This document shows, one piece after another, positions 23,962-29,600 of a DNA stretch of 64,000 nt (the stretch's first letter is position 1; every line of letters begins with the position of its first letter). The stretch is from Ylistrum balloti (lineage: Eukaryota): contig NW_026781872.1 in the NCBI RefSeq assembly GCF_031769215.1, forward strand, positions 434,001-498,000, written 5' to 3'. Under the pieces are notes generated by a model. It saw nothing but the letters and a program-made list of their open reading frames with translations. It had not been told where the DNA came from and ran no database searches. The position numbers were made by a program, and so were the translations under genes.

Positions 23962-24477
23962 ATTTTTTTATCCTTGTCTGTTCATGTATTTACACTGAAA
24001 AGTGTATAATATCTAGAGTGTTTTTTATCCTTGTCTGTTCATGTATTTACAGTGAAAAGTGTATAATATCTAGAGTGTTTTTTATCCTTGTCTGTTCATG
24101 TATTTACACTGAAAAGTGTATAATATCTAGAGTGTTTTTTATCCTTGTCTGTTCATGTATTTACACTGAAAAGTGTATAATATCTAGAATGTTTTTATCC
24201 TTGTCTGTTCATGTATTTACACTGAAAAGTGTATAATATCTAGAGTGTTTTTTATCCTTGTCTGTTCATGTATTTACACTGAAAAGTGTATAATATCTAG
24301 AGTGTTTTTTATCCTTGTCTGTTCATGTATTTACACTGAAAAGTCAATAATATCTAGAGTGTTTTTTATCCTTGTCTGTTCATATATTTACAGTGAAAAG
24401 TCAATAATATCTAGAGTGTTTAGATATTTACATTGAAAAGTCTTTAATATCTAGAGTGTTTTTTTATCCTTGTCTTT
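23962..24477. repeat. 57-bp minisatellite, about 9 copies, starting about 40 bp downstream of the GT31 stop codon
   Basis: Unit GTGTTTTTTATCCTTGTCTGTTCATGTATTTACACTGAAAAGTGTATAATATCTAGA. Confidence 0.95.
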
Positions 24478-24514
24478 TAAGTACACTTAAAAGAAACACA
24501 TGAACGGTTTTGTT

Positions 24515-26692
24515 TCAAACAGTTTTATTGAAAGCAGGTAATTTAAATATATTAAATCTATTCCAGAAACTGCGTTTTCGATCTATCAACTTTGTTGTGT
24601 TTGAAATGACAATTTTCCGTGACAATGGACATTGATTGTGTAGTAATCTAGAGGCAATATGGGAACACTCATAAACAAAAGAGTCTTTCTCTTTTGAATC
24701 AAAAAAACTATCATGTCGTGGAATGATTTTTAATTTTTTTGCTACTATGCCCAAGTAAACATCATCAATGCTAAGATATTTCACATAGGGAAATGCAATT
24801 TGGAATTTCTGAGCAATGTCATATGATACAACGTAAGCTCCGCCATTTACATATGTTGGCAGTTTGTCAAAGGGATACTCATCGTCGTCAAGACTCCATC
24901 TGTGGCCTTTTCCGCGGTAAGGGATTTGATCTTTCATTACATTTCCAACATACAAATATCGTTGTTTGGGAATGCTTCTTAAATATAGAAGTAATCGTTT
25001 CCTATTGACATAGTAGTCATCATCCAGAAACAACAGCAAGTCGACATTGGTACACCTTTCAACTGCCCAGTTAAACGCCATGATGGTTTTCAATGTGTTG
25101 TTTTTATAATGGTCAATGAAATTGGCCTGTAGAATGTCACCATATTTTCCGCTTTCGAGATGTACATCTGACTGAATAGTGCCATGTAACCCTAGCCCTA
25201 GAAGAAATACTAAATTTTGTTCCATATTCTGTTTCAATGTTAGTGTAGAGTTCCATAATTGCCGAATTGCTTCCCTTTGCTCAAAGTTTTTCACATATGA
25301 TTTAACGAGAACAAGGATGTTTTTATTGTATATTTTACTTTGTTTGAATGAACATTCTCTAGGGATATGAAGCCATTTATAACGGAAAAAGTTGATAGCA
25401 TTATATCTGTTTTTGAGCTTATTTCTTAGTCGGCCATTAACGAACGCCTGCATGTTAATTCTTAGTGGATAAGAAAAGTTGTGATCGAAAGACATGTATG
25501 TCTTAGTATCAATAAATTTGATGTTTACATTTTGTATGTTTCTCTCTTCCAAATATTTCTCCATTTTATCTCTAAGGGCAGTTATTTCCCTTTTAATACG
25601 TGCTAAGGTACAATTCTCTATAACTAGCTTTTCCGCTTCGTGGGAACATTCCTTCGCAAAAGTATCTACAAATATTGTATCGAGTCTACTTTCATTCTTT
25701 GGTAAAATAGACAGCTTCTTTGCCACAATTCCGAGGTAGACGTCATCAATACCTAAGTATCTTACAAAAGGGAACGCCAATTGGAATTTCTGCGCAACGT
25801 CACTGGACACGACAAATGCCCCGCCACCTACGTATGGTGGAAACACATTGTAAGGGTACTCATCATAACTAAGGTACCATCTCTCGTGTTTTTCCCGATA
25901 GGGCGGGGCGTTCACCGCAAGACTGCCAATGTATATATCAGTAGGCTTCACACGTGTTAGATCCGTTAGATAAATAGCAAGATTATCATACTGTATATGG
26001 TAGTCATCATCGTGAAAGAGGAGCAGTTCAGCTTGTGGACATACAGACCTAGCCCAATTAAACGCCATAATTGTTTTTATTGTATTGTTCAGATAGGCGT
26101 CTACGAAATCCTCCATAATTATGTCTTGATAAAGTGTTATTTCCTGATCAATGTGCCAGCGTTTTATTATCATGTTTTTGCTGTATGTTCCGAGAATGAA
26201 AAATTTCGACATATAAGGATACTGGATCTTTTCCCATAACATCCGAATCGCAATTCTCTGGTCAACATTGCCTATGTAAGACTTCACCAAGACTAATATT
26301 GATTTCTGCCTTCTTGGTTCGGTCGGAAGGTTACATGATGTCGGCTTCGCCAGATAATGAAACGGATGTGCGTTTATGGCAGATATTGGTATATGTTTGC
26401 CATGATCAATTGCGTCATTGATCAAAGAAACTAAATTTAAATTCATAGGGTAGGTAAAGTTCTCGTCATAATTCAAGTATTTCGTTTCATTGCTAGTGTA
26501 ATTAATATTCGGCGAGAGTGTAGGAACTTCCTCTATCCTTAACACATCCGGTATAGCTTCCTCTGTAACTTGTATGAGGTCGTAACGGGACATAGAAAAG
26601 GACAGTTCAAGCAGTATACTTCCCACAGCAAACACAACTATCACAAGAAGTAGTTTTAATATTTCCCAATGTCGGGGACGTTTGGTCTTCAT
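24515..26692 (-). CDS. GT31 beta-1,3-glycosyltransferase (beta-1,3-galactosyltransferase/brainiac-like), type II membrane protein with two tandem catalytic domains, 725 aa, single coding exon
   Basis: Uninterrupted 725-aa ORF with a basic N-tail (MKTKRPR) and a hydrophobic TM segment at about aa 11-31. GT31 motifs occur twice: LVLVKSY..R.AIR..W, NNT.KTIMAFNW, DDDY (aa 228-231 and 557-560), YP...P.YV.GGA.VVS, IDDVYLGIVAKKL. A 5'UTR intron acceptor (TTTCTGTAG, minus strand) puts the exon start at 26751. Confidence 0.95.
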   Translation of the reverse strand: MKTKRPRHWEILKLLLVIVVFAVGSILLELSFSMSRYDLIQVTEEAIPDVLRIEEVPTLSPNINYTSNETKYLNYDENFTYPMNLNLVSLINDAIDHGKHIPISAINAHPFHYLAKPTSCNLPTEPRRQKSILVLVKSYIGNVDQRIAIRMLWEKIQYPYMSKFFILGTYSKNMIIKRWHIDQEITLYQDIIMEDFVDAYLNNTIKTIMAFNWARSVCPQAELLLFHDDDYHIQYDNLAIYLTDLTRVKPTDIYIGSLAVNAPPYREKHERWYLSYDEYPYNVFPPYVGGGAFVVSSDVAQKFQLAFPFVRYLGIDDVYLGIVAKKLSILPKNESRLDTIFVDTFAKECSHEAEKLVIENCTLARIKREITALRDKMEKYLEERNIQNVNIKFIDTKTYMSFDHNFSYPLRINMQAFVNGRLRNKLKNRYNAINFFRYKWLHIPRECSFKQSKIYNKNILVLVKSYVKNFEQREAIRQLWNSTLTLKQNMEQNLVFLLGLGLHGTIQSDVHLESGKYGDILQANFIDHYKNNTLKTIMAFNWAVERCTNVDLLLFLDDDYYVNRKRLLLYLRSIPKQRYLYVGNVMKDQIPYRGKGHRWSLDDDEYPFDKLPTYVNGGAYVVSYDIAQKFQIAFPYVKYLSIDDVYLGIVAKKLKIIPRHDSFFDSKEKDSFVYECSHIASRLLHNQCPLSRKIVISNTTKLIDRKRSFWNRFNIFKLPAFNKTV

Positions 26693-29600
26693 TTTAGTAG
26701 TTTGTTCAATCTCCAGTCACGGTACCCTCGTTGAGTCGATGGATGATCCACCTACAGAAACCGTAAAAACAATATAGATTATATGGGCTCATTTTTTCAA
26801 AAAATAGATAGATAAATAAAATGTTAAAATCAAATTTATTATTCTTCCACTTAGCATTAATTCCCCACGATGTTTTCAACACGAATTGATTTTATAGTGA
26901 AAATAGTCCAATAACACTCATTATAGTATTTACTACGAATGTATAAGAAGACTGGTCTTAAGTTCTACTAAGGGACAAAAGACAAGAAGGCAAACTATAA
27001 ATGATGGCTGGTCTATAGTTTTGAAGCCTAGCCAGCGCCAAAAATATACAGGAGGTTATCCCTAAATTAAGTGATGTTGGCCACACCATTGCAAAACCAT
27101 GTCTATGTCTACGACTGATAATAGTCAGATATCCAAGTCATTTCCTAGTTTTCATTAAGGACTATGAGGAAGCATTTTGGCACTGTCCCAATTCTGAGAC
27201 ATACTAAGGTCTTCATAAATCTTAGTAACTACTCAATATTTTACGCTTATAATTGTGATTGTTCATTGTCAGTATGTGATCAGATGTGGTATCCTGCAGA
27301 ATTCATTATGATACCAAACCAGTGAATATAAAAACTGACAACAAGAGCATGATTAATATTGGCATCTATGCATCTAATCTCGAAGTGAATCCTACCTCCA
27401 CAACGTCGGCGGCCATATTGCCTACTGCAGAAATACAGACGGTCACCGTGTGAAGTGTAATATCCAATAAGACTTACTGACATTGCTGTCAGAGTCCTGA
27501 ATTCTTATGACATATGTACAAAATATTTGCAAATGTAACTTATATATTCCAGTTTTATCAAGTGTAGGCATACAGTAGTTAGTAAAGTCTGTTAATTTAT
27601 TCATATTTTCCAAGGCCTCAAGGGCTTCATTCTTACAAAATAAATACATTTGTGGTTAAATTTGTTGACTTTTGTAGTTACAAGAGTGTAAAATCAATTT
27701 TACATGAAAAATAAATATGACAGAAACTACAGCCCGCTCACAAAAGTGATGCATAAAAATCCTTTCAGGAGATATAACTTAATTAATAATCAACAAATAA
27801 TGATATGTCTGATTGTAAGTTTCTGTTGCCTGTTAGCTGCTTCATCTGACATACATAAATGTGTATCTAGTTGCTTGAATTAACAATATTGATAAGTTGT
27901 TGCTATACTCAATTTTGGAATGTAAACAAATGATGTAAGTTATCACTACCTGAATCGAAAACATTTATTGATTTATATATCAATATGTTGTTGTTTTAAA
28001 TCGAACGTGGCAATTATAAATGCGGATAATACTACTACACGATGATCATACAAAACCGAGCCAAAAATCGTTTCGTTGATGCTGTTGTCTTGGCTTTTTG
28101 GGTTCGTTTTCTTTCCTTTGTTTGGTTTTCTATTGGTTTTGTTATTTACTGATCCTTAGGTTCAACATTGGTCTCCAAAGTATTTAATGAAATACACATT
28201 AATTATATATTCATATACTTACTGTTCTTATCACTGTTCTCTTAACAGATCACAGATGCTGAATCAAGTTGTTCGTTTATGAATCTTGAAATGTGTTATT
28301 TGTACACAGAACGGATGGATGAAAAAGAATAATTGTTATTTACTTACCTTGCTTTTATACTTGAAGCATAATATCCATACTTAAATTGCCTGTGGACGAA
28401 CTTTCCAATAAGATATCTGGACAGCAAACACAAATTTAAACATAAACGTATGACATACCTGCTGATTATATATACATATATATAATAGATTAAGAATAAC
28501 TACATGTTAGAACATAAATTAAAATGATCATTTGTATGATACCACTCAATAATTAAACGACTTTATGACACTGACGCGTATTTCATCGACCAATAGCTTT
28601 GATATAGGCGTTTAGTTGACAATAGAACAAAAGGATTAATAGTGGGAAGCTTACAGATCTTATACTGATACTCCTAACTGAAGGACGCTTACCCAGGGAG
28701 CCATACAATAACAGATCTAATGACAACGATAATGAACGTATGCCGCTGTTAGGGAGATTAGGCTTTGCAATTCGTTTGATATTATCCAAAAATGGAGCTG
28801 TAGATATGTTATTTTAACATTAGAATTCGTATTAACCACCTGTTGTCTCGCACTCTGTGTCCTTATCTATTGTACTTAATTCTGCAGATAGCAATTAATA
28901 CAACCTTAATCTATCAAATTCAAAAGAGGTACATCTTAATACAGAATGACAGCCTGCGTTCAGTACCAACATAACGCAAAGCAAGGTAATAATTAATATA
29001 TAATAAAATATTAGTAAGAAATATGACTGTTGATGCATAAGCCGCTCCTTTGTAGTGAATGCTAAAAAGTTGTTTATTCACCATAGTAAACGATAACTTT
29101 ATAATAATAGATTAAAATTAGATCATATATAATCAGATTTATCATTTTTACGCAGTATGGAAAAATAAATGAAAAATGACAGGAATGGCAAACTTTATAG
29201 TGAAAGGAATTGCTTGATTTAGCGTGAAAATTGGGTAACGCATGACTTCCTCAGTTTTCATCAAAGTTGAGAAATGAGCGAGCACTGAGGAATGTAGCCA
29301 CTAGGGATGATACTTAATGTTTTAAGAGCGTAAGTATTTACTGAACCATACTAGTATAAAACCATTTTGCTTTAATCTTAATTTGACCTCGGGTTACAAA
29401 ATATGGCTGGTTCGTTATTGTCCTAATGTTTGGTATGGTTTCACTTTGGTTATCAAAAGACAACAACACAATATAATCTGCGATTCCTCATCAAACTTGA
29501 GTAATTACAAAGGGAGTTGAATTCAAATATCACGCGGGAGTTCGTATTTGTCAACAGATATTTACATGCTATCAATTAATACATAGAAAAACAATTAATT

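What the first reader, a model, noticed from the sequence alone, without database searches (positions are those of the whole stretch)
24515..26692. GT31 enzyme with two complete, diverged catalytic domains in one exon
Seen: stem plus catalytic region is duplicated with a period of about 328 aa (aa about 72-363 = nt 26479-25604; aa about 399-690 = nt 25498-24623). Both halves keep the Y..NF.YP stem motif, the DDD metal-binding motif, GGA.VVS, IDDVYLG and the terminal ECSH...C. There is only one TM anchor. The acceptor-side segments differ (APPYREKHERWYLSYDEY vs QIPYRGKGHRWSLDDDEY). Known: GT31 enzymes normally have a single catalytic domain, while two-domain GTs in other families act as bifunctional or processive polymerases. 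Inference: the enzyme may perform two sequential beta-1,3 transfers or extend a chain, making a lineage-specific glycan or glycolipid.
Basis: partly seen in the sequence, partly recalled or inferred. Interest (0 to 1): 0.75.

Follow-up and report, generated by a model that had tools for sequence, protein, structure and literature searches.

The report
Scallop enzyme with two GT31 domains
A scallop gene encodes, in one uninterrupted reading frame, a membrane-anchored sugar-transferring enzyme with two complete and conserved catalytic domains of the same family (GT31). Similar uncharacterised multi-domain GT31 proteins turn out to have arisen repeatedly in marine invertebrates.

Summary
Window 24515-26692 (-) is one 725-aa ORF. 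It has one N-terminal membrane anchor and two Pfam Galactosyl_T (GT31) domains that are 44% identical (E 8e-78).

Both halves keep the DxD motif, the Gly-rich loop, the xED catalytic Asp, a probable metal-binding His, and four cysteines at matching positions.

It is not an assembly join. A genomic contig assembled separately from a public run (possibly the same sample) spans the ORF with SNPs only. A syntenic 726-aa ortholog exists in Argopecten irradians. Both halves are under equally strong constraint there (dN 0.137 and 0.151, with synonymous sites saturated).

At least 15 double-GT31 proteins exist in scallops, in several paralog groups. In three groups one half has lost DxD and the His. 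In this gene's group both halves are intact.

Tandem GT31 proteins are not unique to scallops. Independent arrays occur in mussels, Mya, echinoderms and hemichordates, including a single 2123-aa ORF with seven domains.

The only characterised precedent I found is human B3GLCT, whose extra domain is inactive.

The two-active-site reading is plausible but untested. Donors, acceptors and expression in this species remain unknown.

An earlier scan note had already identified this genome as a scallop.

The parts
24515..26692 (-). Complete coding ORF, 725 aa plus stop. No intron is needed.
   Evidence: It is colinear with the 726-aa Argopecten irradians ortholog P0001: 75% identity, 100% coverage.
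26597..26662 (-). The only membrane anchor, about aa 11-32. It gives a type II signal-anchor topology.
   Evidence: Hydropathy scan. The AF2 model has a helix at 8-35.
25604..26479 (-). N half, aa 72-363: stem plus a GT31 GT-A catalytic domain.
   Evidence: Pfam. The model aligns to B3GNT2 with Z 26, rmsd 3.0-3.2 over 263 residues, and to B3GALT5 with Z 25.3.
26003..26011 (-). DxD motif of the N half (D228-D229-D230).
   Evidence: It aligns to the DDD of B3GNT2. That DDD is D245-D247, with D247 a metal ligand (PMC7948508).
25742..25750 (-). xED motif of the N half (I315-D316-D317). D317 is the predicted catalytic base.
   Evidence: It aligns to the IDD of B3GNT2 (I331-D333). D316 and D317 are invariant in 14 double proteins.
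25640..25642 (-). H351 in ECSH, the probable C-His metal ligand of the N half.
   Evidence: Profile and structure alignments place B3GNT2 H376 and the matching B3GALT5 His within 2 residues. The S-H lines up with SSHG of single-domain relatives. Inconclusive.
25499..25603 (-). Linker, aa 364-398. It has a conserved basic K/R-R site (R368 invariant) and a predicted long helix at 362-383.
24623..25498 (-). C half, aa 399-690: a second stem plus GT31 GT-A catalytic domain, with no anchor of its own.
   Evidence: Pfam best stretch 471-660. Structure matches span 400-689.
25016..25024 (-). DxD motif of the C half (D557-D558-D559).
24761..24769 (-). xED motif of the C half (I642-D643-D644). D644 is the predicted catalytic base.
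   Evidence: D644 is invariant in 14 double proteins.
24659..24661 (-). H678 in ECSH, the probable C-His of the C half.
   Evidence: Inferred by homology with H351.
24518..24622 (-). C-terminal tail, aa 691-725. It is the least conserved part.
   Evidence: 49% identity to the ortholog, dN 0.36. Relatives carry a hydrophobic segment at this position.

Best explanation
This is a genuine, conserved scallop gene. It encodes a type II Golgi-type membrane protein with two complete GT31 (B3GALT/B3GNT-type, Pfam Galactosyl_T) GT-A domains in tandem.

Origin (inferred). Within a scallop-specific GT31 clade, a stem-plus-catalytic unit was duplicated in tandem and fused. The downstream copy lost its own anchor. 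The linker keeps the basic stretch that follows the domain in single-domain relatives.

Function (inferred, not shown). In this paralog both domains are working metal-dependent inverting beta-1,3-glycosyltransferases. Each has its own DxD, Gly-rich loop, catalytic Asp and probable metal His. One polypeptide therefore carries two active sites. The most likely use is two different beta-1,3 additions on the same glycolipid or glycoprotein glycan.

My rough odds:
- Real, intact two-domain protein: about 0.9.
- Both sites active: about 0.65.
- Two different, consecutive reactions: about 0.4.
For: - The ORF is uninterrupted, with two Galactosyl_T domains.
- A genomic contig of 7173 nt, assembled separately from a public run, spans 24449-28500. 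It carries 7 SNPs in the ORF (4 synonymous, 3 not) and no indel there.
- The ortholog in A. irradians sits at a syntenic locus next to the DUF4874/DUF4832 gene.
- Against that ortholog, fourfold-degenerate sites differ at 62-64% while codon positions 1+2 differ at only 13-16%. dN is 0.137 for the N half and 0.151 for the C half.
- All 7 proteins of this paralog group keep DDD and ECSH in the N half. All 6 whose C half is complete keep them there too; the seventh, P0011, breaks off before the C-half DxD.
- Other paralog groups replaced DxD (LNDN; DDS/ESI/EDM; KDG) and usually the His as well. These residues are therefore free to change when not needed.
- The C half has no signal anchor of its own. 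It nevertheless keeps 4 conserved cysteines and glycosylation sequons, so it must enter the secretory pathway as part of the fusion.
- The fold matches B3GNT2 and B3GALT5.
- A poly(A)-tailed 2.67-kb transcript contig encodes a two-domain relative in one piece (L003).
Against: - There is no activity, donor or acceptor data.
- No RNA run is on record for this species.
- The C-His assignment is off by two residues in automatic alignments.
- The acceptor loop HV2 is not more diverged than the rest of the domain. There is thus no specific signal that the two sites differ in substrate.
- In three sister paralog groups, and in human B3GLCT (PMC13597200), the second GT31 domain is non-catalytic.
- B3GNT2 works as a homodimer (PMC7948508). 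A fusion could therefore merely fix a dimer.
- The AF2 domain arrangement is unreliable (pTM 0.49).
Confidence: 0.6

Rival explanations
1. One catalytic domain plus one acceptor-binding or scaffolding pseudo-enzyme domain, as in human B3GLCT. One half presents or holds the substrate and only the other transfers sugar.
For: - B3GLCT is the one characterised enzyme with two GT31-type domains. Its N domain is inactive yet essential for substrate binding (PMC13597200).
- Scallop paralog groups B, C and the P0014/P0056 group kept a conserved second domain after losing DxD.
- Many domains in echinoderm and hemichordate arrays also lack DxD.
Against: - In this protein and its whole paralog group, both halves keep DxD, the Gly loop, xED and the His.
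- B3GLCT's dead domain lost all of these.
- dN is equal in both halves.
Confidence: 0.2
2. A covalent dimer. Both halves catalyse the same reaction, and the fusion only stabilises a dimer that single-domain GT31 enzymes already form.
For: - B3GNT2 is a stable homodimer with active sites about 35 Å apart (PMC7948508).
- The acceptor loops of the two halves are no more diverged than the rest (hand count).
Against: - The halves are only 44% identical, and each version is conserved separately across species. This suggests separate roles.
- Sister paralogs became asymmetric.
Confidence: 0.15
3. A polyprotein. The precursor is cut at the conserved basic site in the linker (R-I-K-R at 365-368). This would release a soluble C-terminal enzyme that uses the N half only to enter the secretory pathway.
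For: - R368 is invariant in 14 double proteins, and K/R-R is present in most linkers.
- The C half has no anchor of its own.
Against: - The same basic stretch follows the domain in single-domain relatives, just before their C-terminal hydrophobic segment. It looks inherited rather than a dedicated cleavage site.
- Several orthologs lack the full R-x-K/R-R consensus.
Confidence: 0.08
4. An artefact or a dying gene: an assembly join of two tandem genes, or a fusion with one decaying half.
For: No RNA evidence exists for this species.
Against: - A separately assembled contig has the same uninterrupted ORF.
- A full-length syntenic ortholog exists.
- Both halves are strongly constrained.
- At least 15 two-domain relatives exist in five or more species.
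Confidence: 0.02

Closest known systems
Human B3GNT2 and B3GALT5 (single-domain GT31, Galactosyl_T type)
   Same: Each half has the same GT-A fold (Z 25-26). Each also has the same landmarks: DxD, Gly-rich loop and xED base. The protein has type II topology.
   Different: Those enzymes have one domain per chain, and B3GNT2 pairs as a homodimer. Here two diverged copies (44% identity) sit in one chain. Identity to the human enzymes is only 24-29%. Donor and acceptor are unknown.
Human B3GLCT (two GT31-type GT-A domains; PMC13597200)
   Same: A tandem of two GT31-family GT-A domains that arose by internal duplication and are joined by a linker.
   Different: B3GLCT's domains are Fringe-type and about 25% identical. 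Its N domain has EEE in place of DxD, no xED and no C-His, and is inactive. Here both domains are Galactosyl_T-type and keep all landmarks. The origin is independent.
Two-GT-A bifunctional enzymes (LARGE1/2, CHSY/CHPF, COLGALT; bacterial K4CP and heparosan synthase)
   Same: One polypeptide carries two GT-A domains. In the polymerases, two active sites alternate to build a chain.
   Different: Their two domains belong to different CAZy families or use different donors. The whole-model structural match is poor (rmsd about 20 Å). Here both domains are GT31, and no polymerising activity is known.
Uncharacterised multi-Galactosyl_T proteins of other invertebrates (Ptychodera flava XP_070542326, 7 domains; Saccoglossus; Mya arenaria, 3; Mytilus coruscus, Holothuria, Patiria, Antedon, 2)
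   Same: The same architecture principle: tandem Galactosyl_T domains behind one N-terminal hydrophobic segment, often within a single ORF.
   Different: These arose independently, because domains group by lineage in the tree. Many copies lack DxD. None is characterised, and I found no paper describing them.

Membership tests
CAZy GT31 / Pfam Galactosyl_T (PF01762) | Profile match above the curated threshold | tested here: met
   278.8 bits against a cutoff of 23, in two stretches.
CAZy GT31 / Pfam Galactosyl_T (PF01762) | GT-A fold like solved GT31 enzymes | tested here: met
   N half: B3GNT2 Z 26.0, rmsd 3.2 over 263 residues; B3GALT5 Z 25.3. For the C half, structure matches span 400-689, and it gives sequence matches to B3GALT6 and B3GNT2.
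CAZy GT31 / Pfam Galactosyl_T (PF01762) | DxD metal-binding motif | tested here: met
   DDD at 228-230 and 557-559. The N copy aligns to D245-D247 of B3GNT2.
CAZy GT31 / Pfam Galactosyl_T (PF01762) | xED motif with the catalytic base, and a Gly-rich loop | tested here: met
   IDD at 315-317 and 642-644. GGG at 289-291 and GG at 617-618.
CAZy GT31 / Pfam Galactosyl_T (PF01762) | C-terminal His that binds the metal (C-His) | tested here: inconclusive
   H351 and H678 lie 2 residues from where the B3GNT2 and B3GALT5 His is aligned. They line up with the His of single-domain relatives if a 3-residue gap is allowed. The His is lost together with DxD in the degenerate halves, with two exceptions.
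CAZy GT31 / Pfam Galactosyl_T (PF01762) | Inverting beta-1,3 transfer from a UDP-sugar | not testable with these tools
   Needs an enzyme assay.
B3GLCT-type tandem GT31 (one inactive domain) | Extra domain lacks DxD, xED and C-His | tested here: not met
   Both halves of the window protein keep them. The feature is met in scallop paralog groups B, C and P0014/P0056.
B3GLCT-type tandem GT31 (one inactive domain) | Fringe-type (PF02434) domains | tested here: not met
   Fringe is only a weak secondary hit (37.8 bits) under the Galactosyl_T match.
Bifunctional two-GT-A glycan polymerases (LARGE, CHSY, K4CP type) | Two domains of different GT families or donor specificities | tested here: not met
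   Both domains are GT31 Galactosyl_T. Donor specificities are unknown.
Bifunctional two-GT-A glycan polymerases (LARGE, CHSY, K4CP type) | Alternating addition that builds a repeating chain | not testable with these tools
   Needs assays with two donors and product analysis.

The most novel reading that the evidence does not exclude
The two intact GT31 sites use different donors or acceptors and act in alternation, for example a GlcNAc then a Gal beta-1,3 step. That would make this the first GT31-GT31 dual or chain-extending synthase. It would also be one example of a recurrent, undescribed class of invertebrate enzymes that string 2 to 7 GT31 domains on one membrane anchor as a glycan assembly line.
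Probability: 0.2. Interest if true: 0.75.

Novelty: new variant of a known kind. Interest (0 to 1): 0.5.

Why it matters
The GT31 review I read (PMC8022947) reports no partner domain for animal B3GALT/B3GNT-type enzymes. The only studied tandem GT31, B3GLCT, has one dead domain.

A tandem in which both copies look active would give a natural system for asking how glycosyltransferase fusions create new glycan-building capacity. The scallop paralogs strengthen it, because one or the other copy has independently gone catalytically silent. The independent arrays in other phyla, up to seven domains, widen it further.

It also flags a set of lineage-specific glycans in bivalves, echinoderms and hemichordates whose makers are unknown.

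The practical value is modest until activity is shown.

Tried and rejected
- **RNA evidence for this species.** The run search found only one holder, and it proved to be genomic contigs. Expression here is untested.
- **Classical dN/dS per half.** Synonymous sites between the window and A. irradians are saturated (NG86 dS above 2 or undefined; YN00 failed). I report dN and fourfold-site differences instead.
- **Single origin of the second-type domains.** The AU test for one clade gave p 0.053. This neither rejects nor supports it, so the apparent swapped domain order in group B stays unresolved.
- **Donor prediction from structure papers.** The B3GalT5 structure paper is not in the library. 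I make no donor call.
- **Source species of the Logan runs** SRR27895284 and SRR18313975. No paper mentions them.
- **Domain arrangement from AlphaFold2.** pTM is 0.49 with 14 sequences, so the inter-domain geometry was not used.
- **B3GLCT structure.** It did not appear in the PDB copy searched, so the two-domain geometries could not be compared.
- **Assembly join or pseudogene.** Rejected.

Operator limits were respected. Read laying was given 5,501 letters. No N stretches were involved.

Full report
**1. The observation**

Window 24515-26692 (minus strand) is a single ATG-to-stop ORF of 725 aa. Pfam finds two Galactosyl_T (PF01762, CAZy GT31) stretches, E 3.2e-83. A weak Fringe hit lies underneath.

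Residues 72-363 and 399-690 align over their full length: 44% identity, 61% positives, E 8e-78. The period is 327 aa.

Both halves carry the same features:
- the stem motif Y..NF.YP;
- DDD (228-230 and 557-559);
- the Gly-rich loop (GGG 289-291 and GG 617-618);
- IDDVYLG (315-321 and 642-648);
- ECSH...C (348-361 and 675-688).

The protein has exactly eight cysteines, four per half at equivalent places. It has eleven N-glycosylation sequons. Only one segment is hydrophobic enough for a membrane helix, at about aa 11-32.

**2. Is it real?**

- *Second assembly.* A public run, which proved to be genomic contigs, holds a 7173-nt contig covering 24449-28500. Within the ORF it differs by seven SNPs and no indel. 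Four SNPs are synonymous. The other three are E382K, D602G and R692G. An assembly join is therefore very unlikely.
- *Ortholog.* The best database hit is a 726-aa protein of Argopecten irradians: 75% identical over 100% of the length. Its locus is flanked by a DUF4874/DUF4832 gene, as in this window.
- *Constraint.* Against that ortholog, fourfold-degenerate sites differ at 62-64%, which is near saturation. Codon positions 1+2 differ at 13% in the N half and 16% in the C half. dN is 0.137 and 0.151 respectively. Both halves are thus strongly and about equally constrained.
- *Secretory entry.* The C half has no anchor of its own. It still keeps cysteines and sequons that only make sense in the secretory pathway. 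It must therefore be made as part of the fusion.
- *Expression.* No RNA data exist for this species. A 2.67-kb contig with AATAAA and a poly(A) tail from another run encodes a two-domain relative, P0014, in one piece.

**3. The family in scallops**

At least 15 proteins with two Galactosyl_T stretches were found. All the named ones come from Pectinidae: Argopecten, Mizuhopecten, Pecten and Ylistrum. Their alignment shows these paralog groups:

| Group | Members | DxD status |
|---|---|---|
| This gene's group | window ORF, P0001-P0005, P0011 | DDD in both halves (P0011 breaks off before the C-half DxD) |
| B | P0006, P0008, P0012, P0013 | N half reads LNDN |
| C | P0007, P0009, P0010 | C half reads DDS, ESI or EDM |
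| P0014/P0056 | P0014, P0056 | C half reads KDG in P0014 |

The His of ECSH is usually lost together with DxD, giving ECSD, RCPR or ECPD. So metal-binding residues decay when a copy stops needing them. Their retention in both halves of this group, over a divergence that saturated synonymous sites, is the main argument that both sites work here.

A careful domain tree puts all halves of the doubles, together with some single-domain scallop genes, in one clade (92/88). The N half of this gene sits in the slower-evolving subclade and the C half sits outside it. A test for a single clade of the second-type halves was borderline, p-AU 0.053. The exact history is therefore open, including why group B has the conservative domain second.

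Single-domain relatives end in a basic stretch followed by a hydrophobic C-terminal segment. The linker of the doubles keeps the basic stretch, with R368 invariant. This fits a fusion of two adjacent genes that deleted the tail segment of the first and the anchor of the second.

**4. Structure and catalytic landmarks**

Sequence and profile searches of solved structures give B3GALT5 (E 1.7e-52 with the profile) and B3GNT2 (E 1.9e-45) as the closest.

The AlphaFold2 model has mean pLDDT 70 and pTM 0.49. It shows two GT-A domains joined by a helix at 362-383. The N half aligns to B3GNT2 with Z 26 and to B3GALT5 with Z 25.3.

Landmarks were mapped using the B3GNT2 paper (PMC7948508):
- The DDD aligns to D245-D247.
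- IDD aligns to I331-D333, where D333 is the catalytic base.
- The Gly-rich loop aligns as well.
- The canonical C-His (H376) lands two residues before H351. That assignment is probable, not certain.

It is about as diverged between the halves as the whole domain (about 49% against 44% identity, hand count). It gives no special sign of different acceptors.

**5. Beyond scallops**

A full scan of 1.84 billion representative proteins gave 8671 hits. Many have several matched stretches. Look-ups and Pfam scans identified the following:

| Organism | Protein | Galactosyl_T domains |
|---|---|---|
| Ptychodera flava (hemichordate) | 2123 and 2159 aa | 7 each |
| Ptychodera flava, Saccoglossus | others, including P0061 and P0066 | 4 |
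| Mya arenaria | 1090 aa | 3 |
| Mytilus coruscus | 723 aa | 2 |
| Holothuria, Patiria, Antedon, Anneissia (echinoderms) | 639-965 aa | 2 |
| Sergentomyia (sand fly) | 633 aa | 2 |

The 2123-aa Ptychodera protein is one uninterrupted ORF (L005:1989-8372).

In a quick domain tree all scallop domains form one clade (98*). The domains of each other lineage group with each other, or position by position within a phylum. Tandem GT31 arrays therefore arose several times independently. By a crude motif scan, many copies lack DxD.

I found no paper describing proteins with several Galactosyl_T domains. The GT31 review reports no partner domain for animal B3GALT/B3GNT (PMC8022947). The only studied GT31 tandem is B3GLCT, whose N domain is inactive but needed for substrate binding (PMC13597200).

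**6. Mechanism**

*Shown:* a conserved single-anchor protein with two intact-looking GT31 domains.

*Inferred:* both are active inverting beta-1,3-transferases, so the protein has two active sites. I favour two different consecutive additions. The halves are old, only 44% identical, and separately conserved.

Rivals that remain open:
- A B3GLCT-like division of labour.
- A covalent version of the B3GNT2 homodimer.
- Cleavage at the basic linker site.

Donor sugars and acceptors cannot be read from the sequence.

**7. Verdict**

This is a new variant of a known kind. However, a GT31 tandem with both sites apparently intact is not described in the literature I could search.

Interest is moderate.

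Noticed in passing
window 23964-24421: A 57-bp unit repeated about 8 times (97% matches) lies just downstream of the stop codon. In the public genomic run this stretch has 30-45 times the depth of its surroundings, so it is probably a dispersed or satellite repeat family.
   Followed up: partly
P0006, P0008, P0012, P0013 (N half); P0007, P0009, P0010, P0014, P0056 (C half): Scallop paralogs of this gene have lost DxD, and usually the ECSH His, in one half. The lost half differs between groups, while the rest of the domain stays conserved. This looks like repeated conversion of a GT31 domain into a pseudo-enzyme.
   Followed up: partly
L005:1989-8372 (Ptychodera flava, CM083803.1): One uninterrupted ORF of about 2123 aa carries seven Galactosyl_T domains. 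By a crude motif scan, only three of them keep DDD. A second such protein of 2159 aa exists, and the four domains of P0061 (Ptychodera) and P0066 (Saccoglossus) pair position by position in the tree.
   Followed up: partly
P0015-P0024 (single-domain scallop GT31): These relatives end in a basic stretch followed by a hydrophobic, Cys-rich C-terminal segment. They may therefore have a second membrane segment at the C terminus, which is unusual for GT31. Hydrophobic tails also persist in group C doubles.
   Followed up: no
P0091 and 11 cluster members (Mya arenaria); P0102 (Sergentomyia): The three Mya domains, and the two sand-fly domains, are nearly identical to each other (branch lengths 0.03-0.17). 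Either the internal duplications are very recent or these are assembly or model artefacts. Mya has many near-identical gene copies on three chromosomes.
   Followed up: no
P0187 (Mytilus californianus, 1283 aa): This gene model joins a reverse transcriptase/RNase H region to a two-domain GT31. It is probably an annotation merge with a retrotransposon.
   Followed up: no
Mizuhopecten yessoensis contig of 1,685,528 nt; A. irradians chromosome of 39,156,874 nt: Several double-GT31 paralogs lie on one contig or chromosome: P0005, P0009, P0025 and P0056 in Mizuhopecten; P0004 and P0010, with the single-domain P0015 and P0047, in Argopecten. The ortholog of this window's gene lies on a different Argopecten chromosome. 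No member of this gene's own subgroup was seen in Pecten, Mizuhopecten or Ylistrum.
   Followed up: no
window 26752-26760: A pyrimidine-rich tract ending in AG lies about 60 nt upstream of the start codon and looks like a splice acceptor. This suggests a separate 5' untranslated exon. It rests on visual consensus only.
   Followed up: no
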